IMG/VR virus record: IMGVR_UViG_3300044625_001067 | Span: 62,001-126,000 of that record | Length of the DNA stretch: 64,000 nt | Reading direction: 5' to 3' (one strand) | In this document: positions 5,433-40,977 of the stretch, piece after piece | How the letters are laid out: every line of letters begins with the position of its first letter | Position numbering within the stretch: position 1 is the stretch's first letter | Program-made: the position numbers and the translations under genes | The notes under the pieces: generated by a model | What the model saw: only the letters and a program-made list of their open reading frames with translations | Database searches by the model: none | Told to the model about the DNA's origin: nothing

Positions 5433-5477
5433 ACTATAGCGTTTTTCCGTCTGAAAGGCAAGGGCGGGAAACCGCCC
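5433..5477 (-). promoter_or_regulatory. Repeated early promoter element
   Basis: GGGCGGTTTCCC box, TTGCCT-17-TATAGT, ATG 6 nt after the -10. Confidence 0.8.
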
Positions 5478-6094: not shown

Positions 6095-6604
6095 TCATCG
6101 CACGTACCGTACGAGAGTGACGTCCGCAATATCGTGGCAAGACAGAGAGAAACTTTCAAGCATTTTTACTATCGTGTCTTCGTTACCGCCAGCGAGACCG
6201 CACCCAATGTATGGGAATCCTACCGCAAACTTCCCGTCTAGTGGCGCAGCTATGGCGCCGCTTCTCAAAAAAGTTTGAAAACTTTTGAGAAAGTCTCGGA
6301 AAAAGTTGTACTCGAAAATGTCTTTGCCCCTTCCGTACGAGTACTGAGTATATGCGTTGACAATGTGAAAAGTATGGTTACCGCTCCCTTGAACCTGTGC
6401 CATGGTAAAACGACCGAGTTTGCCCCGGTCCCCTTCCCGAGTGGAAAGGTCAACGCTCGCTGCTTCTGGGTGCTCACGACTTATTTGCCCTGCGATGCCT
6501 GACGCCATCTTATTAAAACAATTTGCCCCGTGGACAATAATGTCAAACTGGCCCTTGCGAGCCATTGACAACAAGTCCCCGTTGGCCCGATGAAGTGTAC
6601 TCAT
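6095..6604 (-). CDS. Macrodomain (ADP-ribose binding/hydrolase) protein
   Basis: GDLL, IVHGANCFNKMASGIA, NAYTQY, FPYIGCGLAGG. Confidence 0.9.
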   Translation of the reverse strand: MSTLHRANGDLLSMARKGQFDIIVHGANCFNKMASGIAGQISREHPEAASVDLSTREGDRGKLGRFTMAQVQGSGNHTFHIVNAYTQYSYGRGKDIFEYNFFRDFLKSFQTFLRSGAIAAPLDGKFAVGFPYIGCGLAGGNEDTIVKMLESFSLSCHDIADVTLVRYVR

Positions 6605-24782: not shown

Positions 24783-24837
24783 GGCAGCTTTAGGTGGGTG
24801 GGACCGTTGAGTTTTGTTTATCTGGGCAAGGTTGGGA

Positions 24838-28054: not shown

Positions 28055-28755
28055 TCAACGCGGAGCCCGAAGCTCTTAGAGTCTTTTTCTTCTCGTGGAT
28101 CGTGGAATTCGACCTGGTACAACAAAGAGGGACCATCGCTCCGCCCAAATAACTCTCCCCCAAGGGCAAACCTTTGAGGAAGGGTTTGAGTTTACCCACC
28201 GAAAGTTCCCCAGCCCACCCGATCTCGAGTTGACGTGGATAAACCGGCAGTCAGCATGTGGCGGTAAGGCTGACTCACTGTGATCATAATTGCTAGGAAG
28301 CTCTAAGACATCAAAAGAGTTTTTTACTAGGTAGTAAAAGCGAAGCCATGCGGTTCGAAAGTTCATGGTGAAGTCAGGAGTAGTATTCGTCAAGATCAAA
28401 GTCCTGAAGCAACCCGTCAAAAGGTTCTTTGCAGCCGGTGTAAGCGTAAAGCTTATCGTTCATGGCATACCACGAAACATTCAGCAGGTACCAGAAAGTT
28501 GCGTGGTGGCCGTCGTGCCAGAAAAGACCTTCAGTGTCACAATCGAGGGCCCAAAAGGTAGTTTCCTGTGGTACCGAAATCCAATTCTTCCAGTAGTTAA
28601 ATGTTTTTAGTGTGAGTTGAAGAGAATTTGGTATCATTCTGCTTTAGGTCTCCCGCTCGCGTCGTAAGGGCTAGACTTGTTTGAACGCACTACGGGTGGT
28701 GTCGGTAAAACTGGTTTCCGGGGTGTGTACGGTGACTGATTACCGTTATTACTGG

Positions 28756-29229
28756 TCATTTGGGGGCCTCGTGATTACCGGTCCTTAAGGTTGGGTTGAT
28801 GAGTGTAACGTTCACCACACCATTGCCGATATCTTGCGGAGAGTTGTTTGAATCGTCGCAAAAAACTTTCCAGTTTAGTACTGGCACAGACGGTAGTGGG
28901 ATGTACTTTACAATCACGTCTCGTAGAGAGTCCTTGGGGGTTTCCACGTTAGACGCGTCTAAGCATTTACCATTAAAGGGCTCAAAAGCGTCTTTTAGAT
29001 CGTTGCGAACTCTCTCCAAACACTTGCTTGCGTAAATTTTACGTGCGGACCCCTCAGCTTCTTTGAGGCTACCCCAAAAACCCGAGTGTTCTTCCTCGTT
29101 CAACCAGCACCACTCACAGTGATCGTACTCGTATATTTCTACGTGATTGCATCCCTCCTCCTCTCCAGGTAGGGGTGGAAAGTCAATAAAGTAGCTACCA
29201 CCGGATTTATACAGAGGGAAAGGTGTCAT
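28756..29229 (-). CDS. Small protein ending in a tail-sheath C-terminal-like domain
   Basis: KVFCDDSNNSPQDIGNGVVNVTLINP resembles the CDxxNN-P signature of contractile sheath C-termini. Confidence 0.55.
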   Translation of the reverse strand: MTPFPLYKSGGSYFIDFPPLPGEEEGCNHVEIYEYDHCEWCWLNEEEHSGFWGSLKEAEGSARKIYASKCLERVRNDLKDAFEPFNGKCLDASNVETPKDSLRDVIVKYIPLPSVPVLNWKVFCDDSNNSPQDIGNGVVNVTLINPTLRTGNHEAPK

Positions 29230-29256
29230 TTTTGTATGGGTCTTGGCTACTTGGTT

Positions 29257-29319
29257 ATTTTACCGCTTTTTCGGAGCATAAACAAGGCGGAGAACCGCCC
29301 CAAAGCAAGCGGTTAACCG
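29257..29319 (-). promoter_or_regulatory. Repeated early promoter element (two boxes)
   Basis: TTGTTT-17-TAAAAT, distal CGGTTAACCG. Confidence 0.75.
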
Positions 29320-30177
29320 AATAGGCGGGCTAGTGGCCATCTGCGTCTAAAACTAAGTAAGTCCAACCACCGGCAATTACTGACACCGCTAGAATTTCAG
29401 GGGGCCAGCCCTGTCTCAAGGCACCATAAGCTGATCCGCACGCCACGGCAAAGTACAGGGTGAGTTCAGCCAGCAACTTTAATCCCTTCCTCACCGATTT
29501 GACTTTTTCACTTGGTACGGGCTAACCCTCTAAAACTATGACTCTCTTCGTTACCATAGGAATTTCAAGGTTAACAAGTTCACCCTTAACTTCGTCTCTA
29601 TACTCGCATTTAGTATTCACGAAGGAGTAGTGATCGATGTTACTCTGCCACTTTGTAGTGTAGTTACAATGATTAACTTCCATGTTATCAATGGAGAACT
29701 CGTTCTCAAAGCAATAGCTGTGTTTTCTGCGAGTAACCAGAATAACCTCTGTGTCATCAGGGTACTGGCTTAAAAGTTCTTGTAGGCGTTTATTTAACAT
29801 GGTGAGCTCAGTCGTAAAGGTCCCAAAGATTACTATAGGTGATATCTTGTGTTGTAGAATCCAGTCTAACCTGCCCTTCCCCAATAAGGTCTACAATTCT
29901 CTGTAATTCTCCAAGTATTTTGTGCCCATGGGCGGAGTCGTCCAGTGAGGTTTGCAGTGTCTCGCTATTTGTCTGGTTTGGTAACCTGTAGTTCCCTTTC
30001 AGTGCATCTGTAGCCGTCTCTAGGCACCTTTTGCAAGGAACTTGGAAACTCTCGCCCATTTGAGCGCACGCAGCATGGTCTAAACTCTGAAACACCCAGT
30101 CAGAGCTACAAAGGGTTCTCCCGCACCAGGACGTTCCCTTCATGTCCTCGTGGGTGTGTCATATACACTGCCCAGAG

Positions 30178-30768
30178 TCAGACATAGACGTACTCACGCC
30201 ACTCTTCAACTTCTGCTGTACTGATTGTAACAGACATCTTGCTATAGGGTGCCTTCGGCTTTGAGGCGAGAGTGGTGCCACGTCGAGTGACGCGGGTTTC
30301 CATCATCCCAATCTGAAAGCTGTCCCAGCTGAATGGTAGCGGAGAAACATTCGTGGTTTCCTTTGCAAACACCTTCTTTAGGGCAACCGCCCACTCTTCC
30401 GGGGTGCGATTGTCCTTGCAGTTGTTGCACTCAAGGCAGCTGGTGACAAGGTTTTGCCAAGTGTCCTGCCCTCCTCTTGACTTCGGTATCACATGGTCCA
30501 AGGTTAGTTTCGGACCGGAGTACTCGCAATACTGGCAGGTGTGATTGTCCCGTTTTAGAATCAAGGTGCGAGAGGGCTTCGCCGCTGCCATCTTGGCTTG
30601 GGGAACCTTAACGTATGTCTTTAGGCGAATGGTGCGGCTGGACACGACATGGGCCTTGTCCTTCAATACAAGCACTCTAGCCCTCCGCCACGAGGTCTGG
30701 TTCAAGGGTTCGTACGTGGCATTTAAAACCAGAATGGTTTTCTTGTATGCGATTGTCTTGTAGTCCAT
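30178..30768 (-). CDS. HNH endonuclease (McrA-like, LVLNA family)
   Basis: LVLNATYEP, RDNHTCQYC, TLDHVIPKSRGG, NLVTSCLECN. Confidence 0.9.
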   Translation of the reverse strand: MDYKTIAYKKTILVLNATYEPLNQTSWRRARVLVLKDKAHVVSSRTIRLKTYVKVPQAKMAAAKPSRTLILKRDNHTCQYCEYSGPKLTLDHVIPKSRGGQDTWQNLVTSCLECNNCKDNRTPEEWAVALKKVFAKETTNVSPLPFSWDSFQIGMMETRVTRRGTTLASKPKAPYSKMSVTISTAEVEEWREYVYV

Positions 30769-30867
30769 GACCTTGGTGATTTAAGTGTTTCCCCATCGCA
30801 CGAGGGAACGTCAGTTCTTTCAGAATTATACCCCGGAACAGGGGGTGTAAACCCCCTTGTACCAAGC

Positions 30868-32382
30868 CTAAGCTGCGGGGTTAAGAAGTCGAGTACGAAT
30901 GTTAGGCAGTGAGTTTACATCCTCCCCGTAAACCACGCTGTTTAAGAACACGGTGCGAAGCTCGCCTCGCTGCTCTTGCTCACGAGTCTGCTGTTGATGA
31001 AGAACAAAGTTCTCCCCATCCTTTTCAACTCGCAGTAGACCCAACGCCGACTTTTTCGTGCCGCGATCCGTAATGGGATCCTTCATGGTTTCGACGGCGA
31101 GACCGTTAATTTGCCCCCAGGTTGTTTTGTAAGCAATACCGAACGTGTCTCGTGTATGGTATTGGTAGGTGTAAGAACCGATACCAAACACAATGTTTTC
31201 GGACGCCCACCCAAGCTGCCTCATGTGCTCTAGGATGGCCCTGGCCCGTGGAAGAGTGATTGAGTCGCCGTAAATTAGGCCAACTCGAGGGTTCAGTACC
31301 TTGAAACCCTTCTCGTTTATCGTTCCTCCGAAGACCTCCCAGAGAAGCTCAAGCGAGCCTTTGTACTCTCGGCTACCTAGCTCAGCGTCAGCGTCACCGC
31401 AGATGATTTTCTCAGGGTTACCGCTGTCGGGACGGAAGACGACCTTAGCGATGCCCTGAGAATTCGGACAACGATTTAAGATGTCTTCCTTAAGTGCGGG
31501 TGCAATAACAGTCAGTGCATCCCAGTAGTTCCAAGTGTCAAAAACTACACTGACCGGCCCAGTTGGGTATACTTTTGTAATAATTCGACGAATTGTCTCT
31601 AATTCGTTTCTTTGACCGCCAAGGCAGGTCACACTGTGTTCCGTAGCGGGAATACTACCACCAATGAAATTGGACCCACAATCGTAGTAATCTTCCAAGT
31701 AGTCAATGGAAAGGATTGTATCCGTGCCCTTGAAAGAAAAAAGGTGTCCGATATTGTGTGCAGCGGCATCGTAAATGCCTCCGACTCCGCGAGCGGAGAA
31801 GTCGTGCCCCTGAAAGTCAACAAACTGCGGATTACTCCCTGTGATTTCAGCGTAGTGGTCGAGAAGACGGCGAAACTCGTAGGCGATGGTTGCCACGTTG
31901 ATGGCCTTCCACAGCTCAGACGACTTGGCGGTTTCGACATAGTTGGTTAGCCACGGGGCCAGCCACTTGAAGTCATTGTGAGTGTTTTGCGCCGTCAAAA
32001 ACGGCACTCCAATGTTAACACGGCTACCCTCGGGCAGTGCCTTCACATGTAGCGGCATGTAGCCCAGGTCGTGAAGCTCAGCAATGTGGTCAGTGCCGAC
32101 AACACCTTCTCCGAGCGAGGAGTCCATTCGCCGCTTGTATTTGTCCAACACCTTGGCCTTGGGTTGCTGAAAAAAGGTCTCATTCCAAAGATCCCTCAGC
32201 ATCCATTTCATTGTCCCCTGGATGTTGGCCACGACGATCTTGTGGTCGAAGTCAGCGGGCATGTTCGCCAGACGGTCGGACCTTGCCGTCATGTTGGCGT
32301 AGATTACTTCGGTGCCTTCAGGGTTTTGCGAAGGGTGTCCTGTCTTGTAAAAGTCGGTTGCGTGGGGCGCAAAAATTTTCAT
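30868..32382 (-). CDS. Nicotinamide phosphoribosyltransferase-family protein (Nampt/NadV; Namat candidate)
   Basis: TDFYKTGH, HDFSARG, GTDT, PATEHSV, RPDSG, IYGDSIT, FGIGS, KDPITD. Confidence 0.92.
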   Translation of the reverse strand: MKIFAPHATDFYKTGHPSQNPEGTEVIYANMTARSDRLANMPADFDHKIVVANIQGTMKWMLRDLWNETFFQQPKAKVLDKYKRRMDSSLGEGVVGTDHIAELHDLGYMPLHVKALPEGSRVNIGVPFLTAQNTHNDFKWLAPWLTNYVETAKSSELWKAINVATIAYEFRRLLDHYAEITGSNPQFVDFQGHDFSARGVGGIYDAAAHNIGHLFSFKGTDTILSIDYLEDYYDCGSNFIGGSIPATEHSVTCLGGQRNELETIRRIITKVYPTGPVSVVFDTWNYWDALTVIAPALKEDILNRCPNSQGIAKVVFRPDSGNPEKIICGDADAELGSREYKGSLELLWEVFGGTINEKGFKVLNPRVGLIYGDSITLPRARAILEHMRQLGWASENIVFGIGSYTYQYHTRDTFGIAYKTTWGQINGLAVETMKDPITDRGTKKSALGLLRVEKDGENFVLHQQQTREQEQRGELRTVFLNSVVYGEDVNSLPNIRTRLLNPAA

Positions 32383-33320
32383 GGTTGGTTGCGTGGGGTG
32401 GGGTAGTTTTCGGTACGAAGGTAGGTCAAGTACGAGGGTAACTCTTGGTAAAAGGCTTTATACGGGAGCAAGTTCGCAACGAAAAAGTTGTCGATTAAGC
32501 TCCCAAACACCTTAAAACCCTTGGAGAAAATTCCGTGAGTTACATAGAGGTCAATTCGAGACGGGTCGAACTGACGTAGCACCTTGGCGAGTTCGATAAA
32601 GGTGCGACCGCCATCGCAGATGTCGTCCACAATCAGAAGGTTTTTGCCCTTGTAACTGACGTCTTCTGGAACTTCCGTCCTTAGGATTTGCCCGTCTTCA
32701 GGGTTGCGAACTTTCGTAGCGTACACTACAGAGTGGAGCCCCAGTGTTTGTTGTACGAGGGTTGCTCTTTCGACTGCACCTTTATCCGGAGCAATCACAA
32801 TTGTCTCAGCACTAAACTCTTGCCCCCGGTCTTTGAACTTCTGGAGAAACAGTTGGGGTTGTAGGTTGTTGAACTCGCAGCCGATTTCGGTTCGAAAGAG
32901 CTCATTTGCAACGTGGCTGTGCACGTCCCATGTGTACACCCGGTCGCACACTCCCTTAAGATAAGGGGCGAGAGCTTTTACAAAAGTTCTTAGCGAAAAC
33001 GCTTCCCCTTCAGCGCACTGGCGGTCTTGGCGGCTATAAGGTAAGTACGGGATGTCCAATTGTAGACTTCGCAGCACAGGAAGGTCTTTGATGGCCGACA
33101 GAGTCAGAAGAAGTTCTGCGAAACTTTCTCCGCTGTGTATGTCTGCGTCTACGATAATGTCAGTCGAATTTGTTGGAGTGTCGTGCAACCGGACCTGCCT
33201 TTCACCGGCACTGAACGTAAAGGAGGTCTTTGAAATCTTGTACAGGTTTTGTCCGTCGCGATTCGAGTAAACCTCAATCGGCTCTGTTTTCTGATACTCT
33301 TTAGTTTCGGTCACGTGCAT
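32379..33320 (-). CDS. Ribose-phosphate pyrophosphokinase-like protein (Prs family; Adps candidate)
   Basis: FSAGE, PYLPYSRQDR, DVHS, APDKGA, IVDDICDGGRTF, VTHGIFS; ATGA-coupled to the Nampt-like gene. Confidence 0.92.
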   Translation of the reverse strand: MHVTETKEYQKTEPIEVYSNRDGQNLYKISKTSFTFSAGERQVRLHDTPTNSTDIIVDADIHSGESFAELLLTLSAIKDLPVLRSLQLDIPYLPYSRQDRQCAEGEAFSLRTFVKALAPYLKGVCDRVYTWDVHSHVANELFRTEIGCEFNNLQPQLFLQKFKDRGQEFSAETIVIAPDKGAVERATLVQQTLGLHSVVYATKVRNPEDGQILRTEVPEDVSYKGKNLLIVDDICDGGRTFIELAKVLRQFDPSRIDLYVTHGIFSKGFKVFGSLIDNFFVANLLPYKAFYQELPSYLTYLRTENYPTPRNQP

Positions 33321-33342
33321 TGTTGTTTTACGGTGTGAGCTT

Positions 33343-33386
33343 ACTATAGCTTGTTTAGGGGCGAGGGTAAAGGACGGTTTCCCGCC
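33343..33386 (-). promoter_or_regulatory. Repeated early promoter element (variant, box inverted)
   Basis: TTTACC-17-TATAGT, GGCGGGAAACCGTCC. Confidence 0.65.
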
Positions 33387-33667
33387 GCGTACGGGGGGGT
33401 GAAACTAGACCGTGTACCCACTTCCGCTGCACTCGTACGGTAAGTCCTGCAGTACTCGGTAGTAAAGCTCACGATACGCATCGTAGGCAATCATCTCCAT
33501 CCACAAAACAAGAGAATAATCTACCCCCATGAACTCGTCAAAGTCTTCCGCTGTGGAGCGAAGGTAGCAGTCTCCAATCTCCCCGTCTCTCTCAAACTGT
33601 TCGTAGTCTTCGGTTAGTTGTTGGAGGTTTTGCTTGGTAAGTGCTTGGATTCTGTCTCTGAGGGTTT

Positions 33668-34036
33668 TCATTGGGTTTGCTCCGGCGAGTGGGTTAACGG
33701 GGAGGTGCGAGTGCGAAAGGGCAGGACATACTGAGTCTCTTCGGACAAATCGAGACTTTCTTGCGCGAGTTGCTCGTATGAGAGCAGCTTAATTGAGAGA
33801 GCACAGTCAAAAGCTTTGGCCACTTTCACCAGGAGATCTATGCTGTGGTCGTTTATCTCGGGGTCTTCTAACCACTCTACGACTCTCAATTTGACCCCAA
33901 CCTTGTCTGCAAGTTGTTGTTTTGTCAGACCTCGCTTTAGTCTGTTTATTTTTACTTGCCAGGAAATCGCTTGCTCAATGGAGGCTTCCATGTAAGCTTC
34001 TCGGTACTCTTTGTCGTCCCACTGCGGGTTTGTCAT
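33668..34036 (-). CDS. XRE-family HTH protein (antitoxin-like)
   Basis: RLKRGLTKQQLADKVGV...WLE...SIDLLVKVAKAF. Confidence 0.8.
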   Translation of the reverse strand: MTNPQWDDKEYREAYMEASIEQAISWQVKINRLKRGLTKQQLADKVGVKLRVVEWLEDPEINDHSIDLLVKVAKAFDCALSIKLLSYEQLAQESLDLSEETQYVLPFRTRTSPLTHSPEQTQ

Positions 34037-34059
34037 TGCGGGTGTCCTTCAACTGATTT

Positions 34060-34105
34060 AGTATAGCGTTTCTGCGATGCAGAAACAAGGGCGGGAAACC
34101 GCCCC
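34060..34105 (-). promoter_or_regulatory. Repeated early promoter element
   Basis: TTGTTT-17-TATACT, hairpin GTTTCTGC-3-GCAGAAAC. Confidence 0.8.
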
Positions 34106-34240
34106 CCTTGACCCACCGTATGTTTAATCGGGGGCAACCCGTGAGGGTTCCTCTGCTGCCGCCCTAAAAATCTCGTCTATTTTCCTGTGCGCCCTAGTGC
34201 TTCACATATCAGAAACAGCCTAAGTCATTTTAAGTAAAGA

Positions 34241-34263
34241 GGGGGGGGGGTTCACCCCCCCCC
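34241..34263 (-). terminator. Probable intrinsic terminator hairpin
   Basis: G10-TTCA-C9 inverted repeat 16 nt after the stop of the beta-barrel gene, followed by TCTTTACTT on the minus strand. Confidence 0.6.
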
Positions 34264-34279
34264 GTTCTTCTGACGGTAA

Positions 34280-34846
34280 TCAGAACTTGAAACCGAGGCC
34301 AACGGTGCCGACAGGTGCGTAGGCCGTCCCCGAAACACCATTCGTTTGAGTGGGGAACTTCACGTCAGCGAACCCGACGAGAGACGGCGAGAAGGAACGC
34401 TCAACACCTGCAACGAAGAGGAACTGGGATCCTTGTCCTACACTTGTCTGGTAGTTGGCTTGTCCGTTGTTCGTCAACGCCCATTGACCACCTACACCAA
34501 CGTAAACGTTCGTGTCACTCATATACGAATCAGCAACTTCGCGTCCGGTTAAGGAGAAATCAACGGTGCCAAGGACACCAGCGGCAGAGCCAATTTGGCT
34601 GTCGGGGCCAGCCGCAAAGTTAAAGAAAGGGCGAACAGAGGCGGATACATTGGAAGGCTCGCTCAGACGGAACCGCGACTGAACCGCGACTCCAGCGACG
34701 GTGCGGTTCGAAGTGTACTCAGTACCGTCAACTCCTTGGCGGTTAAGATTCACTCCAACTCCGACGTAGTTTCCAACCTCGGACGCCACTACCGGAGTTG
34801 ACAGGAAGGAAGCAACTGCTAACGCGGGAATAAGTTTAAAAGTCAT
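34280..34846 (-). CDS. Outer-membrane beta-barrel protein
   Basis: Signal peptide, alternating amphipathic strands (NYVGVG, VYVGVG), terminal GLGFKF. Confidence 0.8.
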   Translation of the reverse strand: MTFKLIPALAVASFLSTPVVASEVGNYVGVGVNLNRQGVDGTEYTSNRTVAGVAVQSRFRLSEPSNVSASVRPFFNFAAGPDSQIGSAAGVLGTVDFSLTGREVADSYMSDTNVYVGVGGQWALTNNGQANYQTSVGQGSQFLFVAGVERSFSPSLVGFADVKFPTQTNGVSGTAYAPVGTVGLGFKF

Positions 34847-34969
34847 GTTTGTTTTTGTGTGTGTTTTTCTGTACAGAACCGGGTTACATATCCCGGAAGG
34901 TAGTTGTAAGGGTGCGAACCTTTGCAAAACTTTGCTAACCCTCTTAGAGTTACAACTACGGTGGTTGCG

Positions 34970-35215
34970 TTAGTTCTCAGGGCTTATGGAGCCATGGCCA
35001 GGGCCATAAGTACAAAGGGCGACAGGGCTGCCGTTCTCCGTGCCTTCGGTCCAGTTTCCCCCAGATCGAACACAGTCACTCATTCTGTACGGACTTTTAC
35101 CAAAGAGTAAACTCGATGAGACAGAAAGGAGTATGACAGTGATAGACACGAAAATTAAGAGTTCTATGAGAGTGAAGCCGTTAGGTGCTTTCGGTTTAAG
35201 ATGTAACATTTTCAT
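34970..35215 (-). CDS. Type IV pilin-like protein
   Basis: Class III signal peptide G/FTLIEL with E5, hydrophobic helix, C-terminal Cys pair. Confidence 0.8.
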   Translation of the reverse strand: MKMLHLKPKAPNGFTLIELLIFVSITVILLSVSSSLLFGKSPYRMSDCVRSGGNWTEGTENGSPVALCTYGPGHGSISPEN

Positions 35216-35478
35216 GGACTAACCTCAAGAGAATTACATTCAATGGTGAAAAACGGTGTTGAACGGGTAGGCAATATTGTGAATACAATCCCGAGCACTC
35301 TTGCAACATCTGCCACAAATCCCACGTCTACCTCGGAGCCACGCTCAATCTTTCGAAGAAGTTCTACGGGTATTTGTGCAGCAAACGCAATGTCCTGCTT
35401 GGACCATCCCTGAGAAAGCCGTGCTTCGCACAATTGAGTCCCAAATCGTTGGGCGTGGGTTGAGTCGTAGAAAATCAT
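35212..35478 (-). CDS. XRE-family HTH protein
   Basis: ARLSQGWSKQDIAFAAQI...KIERG...VARVLG. Confidence 0.8.
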   Translation of the reverse strand: MIFYDSTHAQRFGTQLCEARLSQGWSKQDIAFAAQIPVELLRKIERGSEVDVGFVADVARVLGIVFTILPTRSTPFFTIECNSLEVSP

Positions 35479-35530
35479 TGGGCAAGATGGCTAAGGAAAG
35501 GGTGACAACCAGGGTCATCACCCGAAGGGG

Positions 35531-35884
35531 CTAAATGCGAGTGATGCAAACGTTAGCGAGTCCACTCTCAGTTACTCGGAGACGCTGAGCAGATCCGTGC
35601 CCCAGGTCGATGATTCGTCCACCGACATAGGGTCCTCGGTCGTTAATGCGAACGTCGGCAATAAGCCCGTTGTCGCGATTGACAACTCGCACCCAAGACC
35701 CGAGGGGGAGGTACGGGTGAGCAGCGGTCATGGTTCCGGGTCGGAAAGTCTCTCCGTTGGCAGTTTTATTTCCGTAGAGGCCTGGACCGTACCAGCTGGC
35801 TTGACCGCACTGCCTTGCTTGAGCGGGTGCTCCGGAGAGAAGTCCGGCGGCGAGAAAGAATGAAGCGAGTCTTGTAAGACGCAT
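35531..35884 (-). CDS. rlpA: RlpA-like double-psi beta-barrel lytic transglycosylase
   Basis: Signal peptide, GQASWYG, TANGE, TAAHPYLPLG, VRINDRGPY, RIIDL; start moved to ATG 35884. Confidence 0.9.
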   Translation of the reverse strand: MRLTRLASFFLAAGLLSGAPAQARQCGQASWYGPGLYGNKTANGETFRPGTMTAAHPYLPLGSWVRVVNRDNGLIADVRINDRGPYVGGRIIDLGHGSAQRLRVTESGLANVCITRI

Positions 35885-35993
35885 GAAAAAAGTAGAGTTC
35901 AACATCCGTGTTTGTTGCATTGCGCAACCACGGCTCAGTGCCCGTTGGCCCAGCGAAGGTGTACCTAGCTGAAGCCGTTTCGGGCTGGACTCA

Positions 35994-36038
35994 AGCTTAG
36001 CTCGTAAAAGGCCCAAGGTAAAGTTCGGGAAACCGCCC
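35994..36038 (-). promoter_or_regulatory. Repeated early promoter element (variant)
   Basis: GGGCGGTTTCCC box, TTTACC-17-TAAGCT. Confidence 0.6.
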
Positions 36039-36039
36039 A

Positions 36040-36678
36040 TCAACCTTCCTCCTGGCGCAGCATCGCCAAGTTGTTTTCGTAGAAGAGGCGAAGGTTGTCG
36101 TAGGTTTTGACCGGCTGATCGTAGTAACTGCTTCCATTGTAAGTTGGAAGGGAAGCCCATTCTGGTGCGAGTCTTGCGAGTAGAGTTGGGGTAATCTTCC
36201 CAGAGTCAGCGAGGTGCAAAGCGTCGCGTCGCTCTATTAAGTACAAGGCAGCCTGATCCTGGTTAGTGGGACCGAAATCGCTTAGGTTGAGCTTTCGGGC
36301 TGCCTCATACCAAGTACTTGGCAGAAACTGGTAGGCCCCCGCTGCTGCGCTAGCATAACGCAGCGAGTAACGTACTTGATTTGGATGTCTGTCTAGCGTG
36401 GACACCGTTCCACCCCCAAATACAACCCGGTAGCCATCATTATGGCCGTCTTTCCAAGTTCCTTCAGCGAAGCGAATGGTGTTTAAAAGGGCTCGACGCT
36501 CTGGGGTGAGTTTGTAAGCGTGAGTCGGCAGAGAATTGATTGGACCGCAGCCTGTGCAAATGAAGCGCGATTCGAAAGTTGTTTCTGGGGCAATGTCCCT
36601 AGCGGCAACGGTGTTGCTGAAAGGGGTTGCAGCAGTTCCAACGAGGGAGACGGCCATAAGTGTAGCAAGGTTGAGCAT
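36040..36678 (-). CDS. Lambda-R-like muramidase/lytic transglycosylase (GH104-type) with signal peptide
   Basis: ALLNTIRFAEGT, AAGAYQFL, DFGPTNQD, EWASLP. Confidence 0.9.
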   Translation of the reverse strand: MLNLATLMAVSLVGTAATPFSNTVAARDIAPETTFESRFICTGCGPINSLPTHAYKLTPERRALLNTIRFAEGTWKDGHNDGYRVVFGGGTVSTLDRHPNQVRYSLRYASAAAGAYQFLPSTWYEAARKLNLSDFGPTNQDQAALYLIERRDALHLADSGKITPTLLARLAPEWASLPTYNGSSYYDQPVKTYDNLRLFYENNLAMLRQEEG

Positions 36679-37203
36679 TTATTGAAGAGAATTCGGCATC
36701 CGTATAGGAAACGGTCACTCACCTGTTTCAAGGTGCGTTTTCCCACGGCACATTTGATTTAAGAGCGCAATGTTAGGCTCCGAGTCCTACCTTGTCTGCG
36801 AAGACAGGGAACCCACTCATAACGGGCGACGTATTTACGTCTCAGGACTTTCACAGTATATCGCTTTCTCGAATTGGTAAACTACCCGGCGTTGAAGGCG
36901 ATAGGTATGTGTTCCACGCAATATTCACGGAATAATTCTTTCGTTTCTTCCCAGCTTTCCTCGCTCGCTGGCTTCCCGAGTGCGGCTGCGGCTTGAGGAA
37001 TGTTTCACTGGGCTGTGAAGAGCTTTTCCATTGCCCAAGTATGATCAATGTCTTTCACTACCCTTCTTGGGATTCCTTAACCGTGGTCTTTCACTCGGAG
37101 GTGAAACCTCAAAGTAAACATCTTGCATCCTCTCTTTCAAGCCTGACTCAGGCTTGGGGGGTGTTTTCTCAATGTCCTTCATAGTAAGTGTTTAAGGTGA
37201 AAA

Positions 37204-38124
37204 CTAGTCGAGTTCAACGACAAGAACGCCGTCTTCTCTTTTTGTAACTTTGCGAACGGTTTGTTCGGTGTTTCGAGGTAAGATAGCCTCATTTTCATAA
37301 GGTACATCAGAATACATGTTTACCGGAGTTAAACTTCTATTCTTTGAGACAAACAAGACACTTCTAGACGTTCTGGAAGCACCAAGGAAACCATTTGCAG
37401 TCTTTTCGTCTAAGGAATAGGACCCGAAACCGGGGTCTTTTAGAACGGACCCAGGGGTCAGTTTTTCCACTTGGGCGTACAAGTCAGCGGATTTTAACGG
37501 GAAATTAACCCCACGATAGAATGAGATACCTTCATTGTTTTTCGGGAGCTTACCTAGAGCTGAATCAAATTCTTTTACAAACTCCTTAGTGATCTCAGGT
37601 TTTTTGCAAGTGGGAGGGTTTCTTAAACAGGCGTTAGTCTTTTTGTGCGGGCGGTCAGACATGTCTGAGGGGGCTGTGTAGTCATAAACGGATTTAGCCT
37701 CCGCGCTACTTAGCTTAACCTTTCTTTGTGCTTCGTTTATCCTTGTAAGGACTTCTTCATGTGTGTCTTTCTTTGACACCTTTTGTTGGTTGTCCTGTGC
37801 TAGCTTATCTGTAAGCTTTTCGAGAGAGGAGTTCAGTTCAATGGGTATCTTTTTACTTGGCTTAACCTTCGCCCCGGTACTCTTTGTTTTTCTCGGCGTC
37901 TTAGTGGCTTTCGCACGCTTAGGCTTTTTAGTTGCCACCTCTTTCGCTTGCTTTGTACCTTTCCTGCACTTTCCAGAAGTCCCGTACGCAGTACCGTCCT
38001 CTCGAACACAACGAGTGTAGTCGTACGGCTCTAAGCCTAGCTCAGAGAAGTTACAGGACGATAGTGCTCCAACCATCTCTTCGCACTTCCTTAGCGATTG
38101 CTCTGAAAAAGACCCTTGGCTCAT
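37204..38124 (-). CDS. Tag-fused ADP-ribosyltransferase (R-S-E clade, VIP2/Alt-like)
   Basis: N-terminal RCVREDGTAYGTSGKCRKG tag; C-terminal FYRG, GFGSYS, ENEAILPR. Confidence 0.85.
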   Translation of the reverse strand: MSQGSFSEQSLRKCEEMVGALSSCNFSELGLEPYDYTRCVREDGTAYGTSGKCRKGTKQAKEVATKKPKRAKATKTPRKTKSTGAKVKPSKKIPIELNSSLEKLTDKLAQDNQQKVSKKDTHEEVLTRINEAQRKVKLSSAEAKSVYDYTAPSDMSDRPHKKTNACLRNPPTCKKPEITKEFVKEFDSALGKLPKNNEGISFYRGVNFPLKSADLYAQVEKLTPGSVLKDPGFGSYSLDEKTANGFLGASRTSRSVLFVSKNRSLTPVNMYSDVPYENEAILPRNTEQTVRKVTKREDGVLVVELD

Positions 38125-38195
38125 AACTGCGACTACTCTTATAAACAAACTTACCCCTAATGCACCCACGACGGGGGTGAGTTTTCAATGAGGAC

Positions 38196-38351
38196 TCACA
38201 GAGTCGATTTGTATCGGTTCAACCCTTTCAGAAAGGTTTTCATGTCTGGGGCCTGCGCAGCATCCTGTCGAAATTGCTCGCGGGAATCAGCTGCAATATT
38301 CTGAATGAGTGCCGCGAGAGTGCGACTGGTTGTGGGGTCGTTAAGGTTCAT
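38196..38351 (-). CDS. 51-aa helical protein coupled to the upstream ART-like gene (not in ORF track)
   Basis: MNLNDPTTSRTLAALIQNIAADSREQFRQDAAQAPDMKTFLKGLNRYKSTL; ATG 1 nt after the upstream stop. Confidence 0.65.
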   Translation of the reverse strand: MNLNDPTTSRTLAALIQNIAADSREQFRQDAAQAPDMKTFLKGLNRYKSTL

Positions 38352-38352
38352 T

Positions 38353-39552
38353 TTAGTCCGGTGTTAATTCAGGGTCGTTCGCTACGATGATTGCTCCACG
38401 GTTGAGAACAACCCAGAAGTCTTGGCCATCGGTCTGTGGAACTCTATACGCATGTATTCCCAGAGATGCAGCGGCTGACCCCACATCGTGATGGTCGTAC
38501 CCCGTAATCTCTCTTGCTTTCTGCAGGGTCTCTCCTTCCCACTGCCTAAACTGCTTCCCGTCTCCCTCAAACTGTACGAGTCGAGCGTCGGACCGGAATG
38601 CAAACGCTGAAACCCTTAGTGTTTTATTTCCACTTTCCCCAGAGTAGTCTTTCGCTGTATCTTGGGCCCATCTATCATGCTTAACCTTGCCAGATAAAGG
38701 GGAAGAAGCAGAGTAACTCCCACTCCCGTAAATCCCGCCACCAGGAAAGTGCTTGTCTCCGTCTGGACCACCACCTTTGAACTGCAAGGAAAACTCATTT
38801 GAACCTACGCCGCGATAAGCCACAATTGGCCTTCCGTCGGGGTTCCGGGCTATATCTTTTCTTGATTCCAGTTCCGATCGTGTTGCAACAACCTCCGGTC
38901 GAGCATGAAAACCTTGCCGTTCGTACACAGAAGTGAGAATCGGCGGTAACAAGGTGCCCTTGCGAGCACTCGAAAGTGTTCGACCGAGCTCCATACCTTC
39001 CTTTTGCAGATGTAAAAGCTTCTCTCTTGACACGTCGTCGGTAGGCTCTCCTATTGCTCGGACTCTTTTCTTCAGTGCTTCAAGTTCCTTTTCGAGAAGC
39101 TCAACCTCTTTCTCAACCGTGGCTTTCAGTAAAGGTTTGCTCGATCCAGGTGTTTGCGTGTACTTCGGCGAGTTTCTCACCAATTCGTCGTATTGATCCT
39201 GAAGGGCACCCTTTTGTTGTGTTTGCTCTGCCTTCTTCGCCAAGTGAGTCTTTAGGCGAAGATACCGTAAGGCGGTAAGGGCACTCTCTGTGAGGGGTGT
39301 GCGGTACCCTGGCTTTGACAAAAGCATTCCCTCAAGAGTCCTTAGATTCTTGTTTAGAGCGTCAGGATCATTCTTTTCGTAAATCTTGACATTTTTGAGA
39401 ACAGACTCTCTTCGAGTGCTACGGTCTTCTTTTGCGGACTCCACTCCCTTGCGACATTGTCCTGCTGTACCGTACACCCCACCGTCCGGTTTCACACAAC
39501 GTGTAAAGTCGTGCACAAACGCTAGGGTATCGGGGGAAATTTCTCCGTACAT
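38353..39552 (-). CDS. Tag-fused protein with C-terminal ART-like fold
   Basis: N-terminal RCVKPDGGVYGTAGQCRKG tag, coiled coil, then AYRG...GGGIYGSGSY...AKDY...WVVLNR. Confidence 0.65.
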   Translation of the reverse strand: MYGEISPDTLAFVHDFTRCVKPDGGVYGTAGQCRKGVESAKEDRSTRRESVLKNVKIYEKNDPDALNKNLRTLEGMLLSKPGYRTPLTESALTALRYLRLKTHLAKKAEQTQQKGALQDQYDELVRNSPKYTQTPGSSKPLLKATVEKEVELLEKELEALKKRVRAIGEPTDDVSREKLLHLQKEGMELGRTLSSARKGTLLPPILTSVYERQGFHARPEVVATRSELESRKDIARNPDGRPIVAYRGVGSNEFSLQFKGGGPDGDKHFPGGGIYGSGSYSASSPLSGKVKHDRWAQDTAKDYSGESGNKTLRVSAFAFRSDARLVQFEGDGKQFRQWEGETLQKAREITGYDHHDVGSAAASLGIHAYRVPQTDGQDFWVVLNRGAIIVANDPELTPD

Positions 39553-39582
39553 TCGTACAACCGAACTAAGCACCAGGGTACT

Positions 39583-40018: not shown

Positions 40019-40062
40019 ATTATACGTTATTTCAGAGTAGAAACAAGGGGGGAAACCGTCCC
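40019..40062 (-). promoter_or_regulatory. Repeated early promoter element
   Basis: TTGTTT-16-TATAAT, GGGACGGTTTCCC box. Confidence 0.7.
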
Positions 40063-40887
40063 AAACGAAAGGTCGTACAAAGTGCTCGCTATGAGCAAAA
40101 GTCTTTCGCTGTCGTGCAACCCCGAAACCCATCGCTTAGGAATAGCCTTGTAACCGTAGTAAGCACCTGCTAGCTGCCCCGTAATCGCAGCAACCGTGTC
40201 TGAGTCGTCCCCGTAGTTCACAGCCTGCAGGATGGCCTCTTCAAAGGACGAAGTTGACCCAAAGTGGTAGAGTGCGGCGTTTAAGGACTTCGGTGCGTAC
40301 CCGGAATTTTCAATTCCCTCCGGCGAGACTTCAGGTTTTCCCCCCGTGCCATTTAAGTATTGGTGCAGCAAACGACCGAGATCTTTGCATAGGTCGGATG
40401 CCAAGTGGCCATGGGTTGTTGATGATGACGCGTCACACGCTGCTACAGCGTCCTGCTCACTTGACTTGTGGTACACAATAGAAACGGGGGATAAACGCAT
40501 CAAAGACCCGTTTCCTTTCGAATTCTCCGGATAGAGACTCAAAGACCCCTCAACGAGAAAAGTCTCAATTGCACGAAGTGTTCCATTGCCGATGTCAAAA
40601 CAGACACCTGTTGAGCTGTTCCTTCCGTACTCGTACCAGTTGGAGTACCGACGCATTTGGTCTCCAAGATTGATCTGCCCATTGCAATGAATAAAAGACT
40701 CGGCAAGGCAAACAGCCTGCGATGTGTCGTCCGTCCAGTAGCCTGACGGCAGATTAAAGGGCCCCCCTGCTCGGTAACCTGTGACGGTCTCAAAGGTCCC
40801 CGGTGGAGAGAACTCCACTGGCGCACCCATCGCGTCACCGATCGCAAGGCCAATAAAGGCTCCGAGGCATTTGTCGAAAGTTGTCAT
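40027..40887 (-). CDS. ADP-ribosylglycohydrolase (DraG/ARH family)
   Basis: GLAIGDAMG, WTDDT, GNGSLMR, TTH, GDDSDTVAAITGQLAGA. Confidence 0.93.
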   Translation of the reverse strand: MTTFDKCLGAFIGLAIGDAMGAPVEFSPPGTFETVTGYRAGGPFNLPSGYWTDDTSQAVCLAESFIHCNGQINLGDQMRRYSNWYEYGRNSSTGVCFDIGNGTLRAIETFLVEGSLSLYPENSKGNGSLMRLSPVSIVYHKSSEQDAVAACDASSSTTHGHLASDLCKDLGRLLHQYLNGTGGKPEVSPEGIENSGYAPKSLNAALYHFGSTSSFEEAILQAVNYGDDSDTVAAITGQLAGAYYGYKAIPKRWVSGLHDSERLLLIASTLYDLSFGTVSPLVSTLK

Positions 40888-40977
40888 TTTTCCTTGTATG
40901 GTTCTTGTTTGAGCGGGCTTGCTTGGGTGGATATAAGACCCAAGGTAAGGGTTAGAGTCTCGCACCATGGGCAAGGG

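What the first reader, a model, noticed from the sequence alone, without database searches (positions are those of the whole stretch)
30868..33386. NARP1-like NAD+ reconstitution operon
Seen: a Prs-like gene translationally coupled (ATGA) to a Nampt-like gene, with its own early promoter and no NMNAT in the window. Established: phage NARP1 is Adps (Prs homolog, ADPR to ADPR-PP) plus Namat (Nampt homolog), rebuilding NAD+ after depletion by Thoeris, DSR, SIR2-HerA and similar systems. Inference: an anti-defence pathway in a probable cyanophage that could also supply the phage's own ARTs.
Basis: partly seen in the sequence, partly recalled or inferred. Interest (0 to 1): 0.62.

Follow-up and report, generated by a model that had tools for sequence, protein, structure and literature searches.

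The report
NARP1 NAD+ rebuilding operon, cyanophage
Two overlapping genes in a 277-kb freshwater cyanophage genome carry the sequence hallmarks of the known phage NARP1 pathway, which rebuilds NAD+ from ADP-ribose and nicotinamide after bacterial defences destroy it; this is a correct call of an already described system, not a new kind.

Summary
On the minus strand, a 313-aa Prs-like gene (32379-33320) overlaps by ATGA a 504-aa Nampt-like gene (30868-32382).

Both proteins carry the features that separate NARP1 enzymes from ordinary Prs and Nampt:
- The Nampt-like protein has the published Namat clamp motif (GSYTYQYHTRD) and the clamp-loop arginine.
- It keeps 18 of 20 NAD+-contacting residues of the solved SPbetaL1 Namat.
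- It scores 434 bits to that structure, against 192 bits to human Nampt.
- The Prs-like protein falls with the validated SPbetaL1 and ICP1 Adps, across a 100/100 branch from housekeeping Prs.
- It has the Adps-type loops (DDICDGGRTF; no RRxRSAR).

Gene adjacency and order are kept in eight related viral contigs. The genome has no NadM-Nudix or NadR-type NMNAT. It has one small HxGH nucleotidyltransferase of unknown specificity, 40 kb away.

The host guess is sound. The genome carries psbA, its terminase and portal are 61% identical to Synechococcus phage S-CBWM1, and the locus occurs in lake metagenomes.

The pair sits closest to bacterial prs-nadV (NrtR-regulon) operons. An ADP-ribosyltransferase, an ADP-ribosylglycohydrolase and a Macro phosphatase lie nearby.

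Verdict: a new member of a known kind. Enzyme activity and anti-defence role are inferred.

The parts
32379..33320 (-). adps: Prs-family ADP-ribose diphosphokinase candidate (313 aa, P0001)
   Evidence: ORF. TIGR01251 129 bits and phrog_619 8e-65. On the Adps side of a 100/100 branch, away from six housekeeping Prs. Adps-type loops DDICDGGRTF (232-241), YSRQDRQCAEG-EAFS and TKVRNPEDGQI; K203 aligns with the ICP1 catalytic K185.
30868..32382 (-). namat: Nampt-family nicotinamide ADP-ribose transferase candidate (504 aa, P0002)
   Evidence: ORF. phrog_448 6.7e-175. Best solved relative is SPbetaL1 Namat 9w5x at 434 bits, against 192 bits for human Nampt. Clamp motif G402-S-Y404-T-Y-Q-Y408-H-T-R-D412 and R37 at the Arg40 position; 18 of 20 NAD+ contact residues are identical. 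Inside the Namat clade (SH-aLRT 100).
32379..32382 (-). ATGA stop/start overlap between adps and namat
   Evidence: Read directly. The same 4-base overlap occurs in relatives L006-L008. It is replaced by a 55-70 nt gap in L009-L011.
33343..33371 (-). Promoter-like TTTACC-17 nt-TATAGT, 22 nt upstream of the adps ATG
   Evidence: It is a degenerate copy of a cassette found about 40 times in this genome. Two exact-match metatranscriptome contigs end at 33325, just downstream; this is suggestive only.
30841..30856 (-). Short G5/C5 stem-loop 12 nt after the namat stop (possible end of the unit)
   Evidence: It has no T-run, was not called by the terminator scan, and its folding z-score is not significant.
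6095..6604 (-). Possible accessory, not shown to be linked: Macro/Poa1p-like phosphatase (169 aa, P0003), a homologue of the Adpp of NARP1-AP
   Evidence: phrog_335 'phosphatase' 2.6e-38. Pfam Macro only 16 bits. 38.6% identical to the phosphatase that sits inside the Adps-Namat operon of Pseudomonas phage K5. It lies 24 kb from the pair.
37204..38169 (-). Possible functional neighbour: ADP-ribosyltransferase (321 aa), an NAD+ consumer
   Evidence: PF03496 1.2e-13 and PF01129 1.7e-5.
40027..40974 (-). Possible functional neighbour: ADP-ribosylglycohydrolase (315 aa), a potential source of free ADP-ribose
   Evidence: PF03747 3.5e-61 and phrog_6572 1.2e-60.

Best explanation
The two genes are a NARP1 module. 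The Prs-like enzyme (Adps) transfers the beta,gamma-diphosphate of ATP onto the terminal ribose of free ADP-ribose, giving ADPR-PP. The Nampt-like enzyme (Namat) then joins ADPR-PP to nicotinamide and releases NAD+. Its adenine-binding clamp (R37, Y404, Y408) makes it prefer ADPR-PP over PRPP.

In an infected picocyanobacterium this would rebuild NAD+ from exactly the two products left by NADase defence effectors (TIR, SIR2, SEFIR and similar). It could also recycle the ADP-ribose and nicotinamide released by the phage's own ART and ADP-ribosylglycohydrolase.

Shown here: gene structure, family and clade membership, signature residues, conserved synteny, and presence in lake DNA and RNA libraries. 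Inferred: the chemistry, the substrate preference and the anti-defence role.
For: Gene structure: and one search give the ORFs and the ATGA overlap.

Namat:
- Best solved relative is SPbetaL1 Namat at 434 bits, against 192 bits for human Nampt.
- Motif GSYTYQYHTRD fits the published signature GSX-phi-X-phi-X-phi-TRD, with aromatics at positions 3 and 7 (PMC12774641).
- R37 aligns with the clamp-loop Arg40.
- 18 of 20 NAD+ contact residues are identical, and the two differences (A362S, F392Y) are the majority state, also found in the Namat of ICP1, whose Adps was assayed.
- All six PRPP-type Nampts (KVP40-like, or next to NadM, or alone) instead have GMGG(G/A)LLQ..RD, G at the S190 position and a short ESRGG loop.
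- The tree has an SH-aLRT 100 branch between those six and 40 Prs-linked sequences, which include the window.

Adps:
- A 100/100 branch separates six housekeeping Prs from 39 Namat-linked Prs-likes, which include the assayed SPbL1 and ICP1 Adps and the window.
- The PP loop is DDICDGGRTF against DDMxDTxGTL. The RRxRSAR flexible loop is absent. The hairpin carries K203 and one extra residue. R97, H134, D232, D233 and D236 are conserved (PMC13586617).

Context:
- Adjacency and order are kept in 8 related IMG/VR contigs.
- No Nudix or NadM/NadR-type NMNAT is found in a genome that is 98% complete.
- Contigs from four lake metatranscriptome libraries tile the locus and bridge the gene junction.
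Against: - No biochemistry is available. Namat of SPbetaL1 still makes NMN from PRPP in vitro (PMC12774641), so some Nampt activity is expected.
- A Namat-clade protein can serve as a plain Nampt. The H. ducreyi pNAD1 NadV sits in the clade without an Adps, although it has lost both clamp aromatics.
- The AU test does not formally reject placing the window lineage next to the Nampt group. That tree is 29.5 lnL worse, with p 0.055.
- ICP1 Phe92, which contacts the ADPR adenine, is Cys in the window and in most clade members.
- The C-terminal tail after THG is 53 aa. That equals SPbL1 but lies between ICP1 (40) and housekeeping Prs (64-77).
- The Adps outgroup held class I Prs only.
- The genome has one HxGH nucleotidyltransferase whose homologues are auto-annotated by some sources as NMNAT.
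- RNA-library contigs cannot prove transcription.
Confidence: 0.8

Rival explanations
1. Classical salvage. The Prs-like enzyme makes PRPP from ribose-5-phosphate, and the Nampt-like enzyme makes NMN from PRPP and nicotinamide. NMN is then adenylylated by a host NMNAT or by the phage's own 167-aa HxGH nucleotidyltransferase. This would be a NARP2-like route with its own PRPP supply.
For: - Generic family names say ribose-phosphate diphosphokinase and nicotinate/nicotinamide phosphoribosyltransferase.
- Namat enzymes retain PRPP activity (PMC12774641).
- H. ducreyi NadV lies in the same clade.
- A nucleotidyltransferase with both HxGH and SSTxxR motifs exists at genome 52442-52945. Some of its homologues are named NMNAT by JGI.
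- The AU test is borderline.
Against: - Both proteins carry the NARP1-type signatures and lack the Prs and Nampt-type ones.
- No NadM-Nudix or NadR exists in the genome.
- The 167-aa protein matches glycerol-3-phosphate cytidylyltransferase better (1.5e-5) than NMNAT (0.02) by profile.
- Its fold matches PPAT, NaMNAT, NMNAT and GCT about equally, at TM 0.5-0.68.
- It lies 40 kb from the pair.
- It is also present in S-CBWM1, which has no Nampt/Namat at all.
- Osterman et al. found Nampt-clade genes, not Namat-clade genes, to go with Nmnat.
Confidence: 0.1
2. The chemistry is the same as NARP1, but the main role is housekeeping for the phage rather than counter-defence. The pathway would recycle the nicotinamide and ADP-ribose produced by the phage's own ADP-ribosyltransferase, glycohydrolase and Macro enzymes, and so keep NAD+ up during a long jumbo-phage infection.
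For: - An ART (37204-38169), an ADP-ribosylglycohydrolase (40027-40974) and a Macro phosphatase (6095-6604) are on the same strand of the same non-structural region.
- The window's pair nests among bacterial prs-nadV operons, which are chromosomal and ADPR-regulated (PMC2330246).
- Osterman et al. allow housekeeping roles for bacterial NARP1.
Against: - In every phage tested so far, NARP1 acts as counter-defence.
- ARTs release nicotinamide but fix ADP-ribose on targets, so the flux of free ADPR may be small.
- Macro and ART genes are common in phages without NARP1.
- No linkage beyond a few kb of shared neighbourhood was tested.
Confidence: 0.2
3. The pair is a recently captured bacterial prs-nadV operon that is decaying or has no function in the phage.
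For: Nearest relatives of both proteins are bacterial (55-59% for Namat, 37-42% for Adps). A homing HNH gene lies next door.
Against: - Both ORFs are intact, with all catalytic residues.
- The pair is kept across relatives whose Adps has diverged to 56-61% identity and whose Namat to 83-87%, which implies long purifying selection in the phage lineage.
- Contigs in RNA libraries cover it.
Confidence: 0.03

Closest known systems
NARP1 (Adps + Namat) of Bacillus phage SPbetaL1, E. coli phage Bas63, Bacillus phage Fado and Vibrio phage ICP1 (Osterman et al. 2024, bioRxiv 10.1101/2024.02.11.579819; PMC12774641; PMC13586617)
   Same: - Two adjacent co-oriented genes, with the Prs-like gene first.
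- Namat clamp motif and loop arginine.
- Catalytic His, Asp and Arg.
- Adps catalytic lysine and acceptor residues.
- DDICDG-type PP loop, as in ICP1.
- No NadM-Nudix or NadR in the genome.
   Different: - Only 44-46% (Namat) and 30-31% (Adps) identical to the assayed proteins.
- The window lineage branches among bacterial operons, not with other phage NARP1s.
- The clamp loop is 4 residues longer than in SPbetaL1.
- The host is a freshwater picocyanobacterium and the genome is 277 kb with psbA.
- Activity is untested.
NARP1-AP (Adps-Adpp-Namat, Vibrio phage Gary; bioRxiv 10.64898/2026.01.28.702374)
   Same: The genome encodes a Poa1p-like Macro 'phosphatase'. It belongs to the same family as the one embedded in the NARP1 operon of Pseudomonas phage K5 (38.6% identity).
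   Different: The Macro gene is 24 kb away, not in the operon. The family is also common in phages without NARP1, so linkage is not shown.
NARP2 (Nampt + NMNAT/Nudix, Vibrio phage KVP40)
   Same: Both are Nampt-superfamily enzymes that use nicotinamide, and both would restore NAD+.
   Different: - 29-30% identity to KVP40-like and cyanophage BUCT-ZZ01 Nampts.
- On the opposite side of a fully supported branch.
- Lacks the GMGGxLLQ motif.
- No NadM-Nudix partner.
- Has a Prs-like partner instead.
Bacterial prs-nadV operons of the NrtR regulon (Shewanella, Acinetobacter ADP1, Chromobacterium, Cytophaga; Rodionov et al. 2008, PMC2330246) and bacterial NARP1 of Paenibacillus foliorum (PMC12774641)
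   Same: These are the closest sequences: 55-60% (Namat) and 37-42% (Adps). They share the gene order and the same Adps and Namat signatures in 76 of 80 loci.
   Different: The phage lacks the NrtR-like Nudix regulator that flanks most bacterial copies. The phage copy sits behind a phage-type promoter cassette and next to an HNH endonuclease.
Housekeeping class I PRPP synthase (E. coli Prs) with NadV/NadM salvage
   Same: Same folds, and the same conserved ribose and ATP-binding core residues.
   Different: - 27% identity to E. coli Prs.
- Lacks the RRxRSAR loop.
- Lacks the DT of the ribose-5-phosphate loop.
- Shorter C-terminus.

Membership tests
NARP1 | Prs-family protein belonging to the Adps clade, separate from housekeeping Prs | tested here: met
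   A 100/100 branch separates 6 housekeeping Prs (E. coli and five genomes that also carry a prs2) from 39 Namat-linked sequences. These include the assayed SPbL1 and ICP1 Adps and the window. Caveat: no class II or III Prs was in the outgroup.
NARP1 | Adps donor-site (PP loop) and remodelled flexible loop and hairpin | tested here: met
   The window has DDICDGGRTF, as do ICP1, Se-G, mistaenkt and 24 bacterial prs2; Prs has DDMxDTxGTL. It has no RRxRSAR loop. The hairpin is one residue longer. SPbL1 and Staph K use a variant (DDLSSFGGTF), so the signature is not universal. The paper's own alignment figure could not be seen.
NARP1 | Adps catalytic Lys185 and acceptor residues (Arg87, His121, Asp161, Asp212, Asp213, Asp216 in ICP1 numbering) | tested here: met
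   All are present (K203, R97, H134, D232, D233, D236). They are shared with Prs, so they show competence rather than specificity. Phe92 is Cys here and in most clade members.
NARP1 | Loss of the C-terminal alpha11-alpha12 module of Prs | tested here: inconclusive
   There are 53 residues after the THG motif. This equals SPbL1 Adps (53), is longer than ICP1 (40), and is shorter than housekeeping Prs (64-77). Close relatives have 44. No structure was predicted.
NARP1 | Nampt-family protein in the Namat clade, distinct from PRPP-preferring Nampt | tested here: met
   (SH-aLRT 100), with bit scores. Caveat: the AU test of the window lineage held with the Nampt group gives p 0.055.
NARP1 | Namat selectivity-clamp helix motif GSX-phi-X-phi-X-phi-TRD, with aromatics at positions 3 and 7 | tested here: met
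   GSYTYQYHTRD at residues 402-412. Nampt-type sequences have GMGG(G/A)LLQxxxRD.
NARP1 | Clamp loop with Arg, Lys or Tyr as the stacking residue | tested here: met
   R37 aligns with SPbL1 Arg40 in the HMMER and MAFFT alignments. The loop is 4 residues longer.
NARP1 | Intact Nampt-like catalytic core (Phe189, Asp215, His245, Arg306 in SPbL1 numbering) | tested here: met
   F195, D221, H249 and R317.
NARP1 | adps and namat within ten genes of each other | tested here: met
   They overlap by 4 bases. They are adjacent in 8 related contigs.
NARP1 | No Nmnat in the same phage (NARP1 and NARP2 were not found together) | tested here: inconclusive
   No Nudix, NadM-Nudix or NadR was found. One 167-aa HxGH nucleotidyltransferase of unresolved specificity exists. 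It also occurs in S-CBWM1, which has no Namat.
NARP1 | ADPR + ATP gives ADPR-PP; ADPR-PP + nicotinamide gives NAD+; rescue from NADase defences | not testable with these tools
   This needs purified proteins and infection or co-expression assays.
NARP2 | KVP40-type Nampt together with an NMNAT (NadM-Nudix) | tested here: not met
NARP1-AP | Macro-domain ADPR-1''-phosphate phosphatase inside the NARP1 operon | tested here: not met
   None of the ten neighbouring proteins scanned (28076-39573; the 81-aa and 88-aa ORFs at 34970-35478 were left out) has a Macro domain. A homologue lies 24 kb away.
Housekeeping class I PRPP synthase | RRxRSAR flexible loop, DT in the ribose-5-phosphate loop, full C-terminal module, high score to equivalog models | tested here: not met
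   NCBIfam equivalogs score 48-122 bits against cut-offs of 296-536. Housekeeping copies score 353-408 bits to TIGR01251, against 129 for the window protein.

The most novel reading that the evidence does not exclude
The pair was captured from a bacterial ADP-ribose-inducible prs-nadV (NrtR-regulon) operon. In this jumbo cyanophage it is one arm of a self-contained ADP-ribose/NAD+ cycle. The phage ART spends NAD+. The glycohydrolase and the Macro phosphatase free ADP-ribose from targets or from ADPR-1''-phosphate. Adps-Namat then turns ADP-ribose plus nicotinamide back into NAD+. The module would thus serve the phage's own host-takeover chemistry as much as counter-defence.
Probability: 0.2. 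Interest if true: 0.55.

Novelty: new member of a known kind. Interest (0 to 1): 0.33.

Why it matters
It extends NARP1 to an uncultured lineage of 277-kb psbA-carrying freshwater cyanophages. That implies NAD+-depleting defences matter in lake picocyanobacteria.

It shows that the published Namat clamp motif and an Adps-type PP loop cleanly sort Prs/Nampt look-alikes in sequence data.

As a by-product, the long-puzzling second prs of bacterial prs-nadV operons, which are induced by ADP-ribose through NrtR, carries the same signatures in 76 of the 80 best loci kept, out of at least 566 matching stretches in bacterial genomes. That fits NARP1 chemistry as a widespread bacterial housekeeping route.

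For the scan itself the result is a correct annotation of a known system.

Tried and rejected
- DNA-level search against phages gave only short 66-72% matches inside namat, which was uninformative.
- The first genome-contig scan with the single protein found nothing. The alignment-based scan worked.
- The best 'phage' hit, Acinetobacter phage MD-2021a, turned out to be a bacterial-looking contig with prs-nadV and an NrtR-like Nudix gene, not a phage relative.
- The PDB held no Adps-clade chain among the sequence matches of P0001. The best matches were archaeal and bacterial PRPP synthases at 61-66 bits.
- The 167-aa nucleotidyltransferase could not be assigned by any of six routes: Pfam, NCBIfam, PHROGs, PDB sequence search, PDB profile search, and a pLDDT 95 model searched with Foldseek. 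All gave a generic HxGH fold.
- A terminator upstream of adps and one after namat were considered. Folding energies are no better than shuffles, so unit boundaries are not claimed.
- The generic promoter scan alone is at chance level.
- The AU test did not formally reject the alternative placement.
- RNA-library contigs cannot show strand, ends or level, so 'expressed' and 'early' are not claimed.
- Complex prediction was not used. [quoted passage not shown]
Full report
**What is there.** The finding's coordinates cover two minus-strand ORFs. One is a 313-aa gene at 32379..33320 and the other a 504-aa gene at 30868..32382. The downstream ATG overlaps the upstream TGA as ATGA at 32379-32382.

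- The first protein (P0001) matches ribose-phosphate diphosphokinase models: TIGR01251 1.5e-37, phrog_619 8e-65, and Pfam Pribosyltran and Pribosyltran_N.
- The second (P0002) matches the Nampt/NadV family: PF04095 8.6e-33, NF006629 3.3e-146, phrog_448 6.7e-175.
- Neither has a paralogue in the genome.

**What genome this is.** The window is bases 62001-126000 of a single 277,244-bp IMG/VR virus record. CheckV puts it at 98% complete, and its G+C is 49.8%.

- Its terminase large subunit and portal are 60.5% and 61% identical to those of Synechococcus phage S-CBWM1. The next-best hits are the S-TIM5 cyanophages at 32-35%.
- The genome carries a psbA-type reaction-centre gene (PF00124, 8.6e-86).
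- The locus is held by lake-water and freshwater metagenomes from about 20 studies and by six lake metatranscriptome libraries.

'Probable cyanophage' is thus well supported. The best description is a freshwater jumbo cyanophage of picocyanobacteria.

**Is the Nampt-like protein a Namat?** Lan et al. (PMC12774641) solved SPbetaL1 Namat. They defined an adenine-binding selectivity clamp made of two parts. One is a helix motif GSX-phi-X-phi-X-phi-TRD, whose aromatic positions 3 and 7 stack on the adenine. The other is a variable loop that gives an Arg, Lys or Tyr.

- P0002 has GSYTYQYHTRD at 402-412, and R37 aligns with Arg40.
- Of the 20 residues that contact NAD+ in the crystal structure, 18 are identical. 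The two differences (A362S, F392Y) are the commonest state in the clade and also occur in the Namat of ICP1, the phage whose Adps was assayed.
- By sequence, the best solved relatives are the SPbetaL1 Namat entries 9w5x and 9w5w at 434 bits. Human Nampt scores 192 bits and the Xanthomonas enzyme 157.
- I collected six PRPP-type Nampts: KVP40-like R11Z, Cronobacter phage leB, Synechococcus phage BUCT-ZZ01, Rhizobium phage X66 and Ralstonia (the last three next to NadM-Nudix), and Rhodococcus (alone). All have GMGG(G/A)LLQxxxRD, a Gly at the Ser190 position, a short ESRGG loop and AxEHST.
- In a 46-sequence tree these six are split from 40 Prs-linked sequences by a branch with SH-aLRT 100. The window protein lies deep in the second group.

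An instructive exception is H. ducreyi pNAD1 NadV. It has no Adps partner. It sits in the Namat clade but has lost both clamp aromatics (GAQTYQRNTRD). This suggests the motif tracks function rather than ancestry alone.

One caution applies. An AU test of a tree that holds the window lineage together with the Nampt group is 29.5 log-likelihood units worse, but gives p 0.055, which is not a formal rejection.

**Is the Prs-like protein an Adps?** Liu et al. (PMC13586617) solved ICP1 Adps. They describe a remodelled PP loop and catalytic hairpin, the essential Lys185, degenerate regulatory loops, and loss of the C-terminal alpha11-alpha12 module.

I aligned P0001 with three groups of sequences:

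- the assayed ICP1 and SPbL1 Adps, seven further phage Adps and five viral-contig relatives;
- 24 bacterial prs2 genes that sit next to Namat-type genes;
- six housekeeping Prs, five of them from genomes that also carry a prs2.

The comparison gives these results:

| Feature | Window protein | Housekeeping Prs |
|---|---|---|
| PP loop | DDICDGGRTF, as in ICP1 and most of the clade | DDMxDTxGTL |
| Flexible loop | no RRxRSAR | RRxRSAR present |
| Catalytic hairpin | one residue longer, carries K203 | shorter |
| Core residues | R97, H134, D232, D233, D236 conserved | also conserved |
| Score to TIGR01251 | 129 bits, like the bacterial prs2 copies (98-144) | 353-408 bits |

The tree separates housekeeping Prs from everything else at 100/100, with the window on the Adps side.

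Three caveats remain. The tail after the THG motif is 53 residues, equal to SPbL1 but between ICP1 and Prs. ICP1 Phe92 is Cys here. Only class I Prs served as outgroup.

**Context and conservation.**

- Eight related IMG/VR contigs keep adps directly upstream of namat. Their Namat is 83-98% identical and their Adps 56-100%. Seven also keep the HNH gene downstream. A ninth contig, a short fragment, holds namat and the HNH gene only.
- The ATGA overlap is present only in the closest three.
- No Macro or RyR-domain gene is found among the ten neighbouring proteins scanned; the two small ORFs at 34970-35478 were not scanned.
- The genome has no Nudix domain and nothing resembling NadM-Nudix beyond a 34-residue HxGH stretch.

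That stretch belongs to a 167-aa nucleotidyltransferase at genome 52442-52945, about 40 kb from the pair.

- It has HxGH and SSTxxR motifs, and some of its homologues are named NMNAT by JGI.
- Its family profile matches glycerol-3-phosphate cytidylyltransferase (1.5e-5) better than NMNAT (0.02).
- A pLDDT 95 model matches PPAT, NaMNAT, NMNAT and GCT about equally.
- The family is present in S-CBWM1, which has no Namat at all.

I therefore treat it as unassigned and as weak support at most for the classical-salvage rival.

**Promoter.**

- The generic sigma-70 scan finds TTTACC-17-TATAGT at 33371-33343, but at chance frequency.
- TATAGTA is the most enriched 7-mer in upstream regions of this genome.
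- About 37 sites share an extended cassette: a G+C hairpin, then TTGYTT, 17 nt, then TATAGT. Three more have an inverted hairpin, one of which is the adps site. Shuffles give fewer than 1.
- All copies lie on the coding strand within 4-171 kb and none in the structural module.
- The adps copy is degenerate, and its hairpin is not stable.
- Two exact-match metatranscriptome contigs from different studies end at 33325, just downstream of the box. Contigs from two other libraries run through it. Contigs cannot define RNA ends.

A dedicated promoter is therefore plausible, and 'early' is an inference.

**Where the pair came from.** The nearest relatives are bacterial. At least 566 stretches in genome contigs encode a relative.

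- The best 80 are 46-60% identical to P0002. They come from Acinetobacter, Hydromonas, Marinomonas, Achromobacter, Chromobacterium, Pedobacter, Fibrella and many MAGs.
- 76 of the 80 have a prs-like gene upstream of it, directly adjacent in most.
- 70 have an NrtR-like Nudix gene nearby.
- 69 have an aromatic at both clamp positions of the Namat motif. The other 11 carry His, Gly, Met, Asn, Cys or Ser at one or both.

This is the prs-nadV operon of the NrtR regulon, which is de-repressed by ADP-ribose. Its dedicated second prs was called unexplained in 2008 (PMC2330246). The window lineage nests inside a bacterial subclade (SH-aLRT 99). Capture from bacteria is therefore likely, though the direction was not formally tested.

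**How it most likely works.** Adps pyrophosphorylates free ADP-ribose with ATP. Namat condenses ADPR-PP with nicotinamide to give NAD+. The result is restoration of NAD+ after cleavage by NADase effectors, as shown for SPbetaL1, Bas63, Fado and ICP1 homologues.

An ART (37204-38169), an ADP-ribosylglycohydrolase (40027-40974) and a Poa1p-like Macro phosphatase lie on the same strand. The Macro phosphatase (6095-6604) is 38.6% identical to the one inside the NARP1 operon of Pseudomonas phage K5. The module may therefore also recycle the products of the phage's own ADP-ribosylation chemistry, and with the Macro enzyme it may handle ADPR-1''-phosphate. These links are inferred.

**Verdict.** The locus is a new member of a known kind (NARP1), which Osterman et al. 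found in 4.3% of sequenced phages. No paper in the library mentions NARP1 together with cyanophages, but Microcystis phage Mvi-JY20 already carries an Adps-Namat pair. Interest is modest. The confidence of 0.8 refers to the biochemical assignment. The anti-defence role rests on analogy.

Noticed in passing
Genome-wide. In the window (minus strand), near 5476, 13498, 16325, 21052, 33383, 44401, 47680, 51516, 52765, 59147 and 61318: A conserved cassette of about 50 nt recurs roughly 40 times upstream of genes: a G+C hairpin (GGGGCGGTTTMCCSCC), then CTTGYTTCTGC..GCAGAAACGG, then TATAGTA. Shuffles give fewer than 1. Copies lie only in genome 4-171 kb and always on the coding strand. This looks like a terminator-promoter unit of the non-structural genes. 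A different GATATAGTCTG motif occurs three times in the structural region.
   Followed up: partly
L011:6001-8448 and L014:6001-8448: In two related viral contigs the Namat ORF is 815 aa. It has an in-frame insert of about 310 aa inside the catalytic RPD|SGDP motif. The insert starts with Cys, ends GN|S, and holds a LAGLIDADG-like LAIAFQADGSY, so it is a probable intein with a homing endonuclease.
   Followed up: partly
window 37204-38169 (-) and 40027-40974 (-): An ADP-ribosyltransferase (PF03496 1.2e-13) and an ADP-ribosylglycohydrolase (PF03747 3.5e-61) lie 3.9 and 6.7 kb upstream of the NARP1 pair on the same strand.
   Followed up: partly
window 6095-6604 (-): A Macro/Poa1p-like 'phosphatase' (phrog_335 2.6e-38). 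It is 40% identical to a protein of the 244-kb Synechococcus phage B23 and 38.6% identical to the phosphatase inside the Adps-Namat operon of Pseudomonas phage K5. It is a candidate Adpp (ADPR-1''-phosphate phosphatase) that is not linked to the operon.
   Followed up: partly
genome 52442-52945 (-), outside the window (L001:1288-1791): A 167-aa HxGH/SSTxxR nucleotidyltransferase from a family of at least 157 metagenomic proteins, variously auto-named NMNAT or cytidylyltransferase. A pLDDT 95 model matches PPAT, NMNAT and GCT about equally. The family is also present in S-CBWM1. Its substrate is unknown.
   Followed up: yes
L015-L094 (bacterial genomes): 76 of 80 bacterial loci pair a divergent prs2 with a nadV. 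69 of the nadV genes keep both clamp aromatics of the Namat motif, and most loci also have an NrtR-like Nudix regulator. This is the ADP-ribose-responsive prs-nadV regulon of Rodionov et al. 2008. NARP1 chemistry would explain its 'unexpected' second prs.
   Followed up: partly
L122:3828-5315 (H. ducreyi plasmid pNAD1): NadV of pNAD1 branches inside the Namat clade but has lost both clamp aromatics (GAQTYQRNTRD) and has no Adps. The solved chain 9ke8 shows the same motif. It looks like a reversion of a Namat to plain Nampt use.
   Followed up: no
window 30178-30768 (-): An HNH endonuclease (PF01844 1.5e-14) lies directly downstream of namat and is conserved there in eight of the nine related contigs. 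A TATAAT box and a G5/C5 stem-loop lie in the 99-nt spacer.
   Followed up: no
window 34241-34263: A perfect G9/C9 stem-loop with a 4-5 nt loop, called as terminator-like on both strands. It lies between the 215-aa ORF and the HTH gene (33668-34036).
   Followed up: no
window 134-1612, 23670-24902, 44960-46102, 49077-49991, 52808-54484: Other notable genes on the minus strand: a DUF2828/DUF7788 protein (phrog_850, annotated 'RNA-binding protein'), a T4 Rnl1-type RNA ligase, an RlaP-family nucleotidyltransferase, a radical-SAM/Fe-S protein, and a 558-aa PAP2/vanadium-haloperoxidase-like protein.
   Followed up: no
L003 (CAKLQF020000015.1): The INPHARED record named 'Acinetobacter phage MD-2021a' carries ordinary chromosomal genes around prs-nadV (ABC transporters, AraC, efflux pumps). 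It looks like bacterial DNA filed as phage.
   Followed up: no
genome 272210-273082 (+), outside the window (L140): A psbA-type photosystem II reaction-centre gene (PF00124 8.6e-86) in a 359-aa open frame.
   Followed up: no
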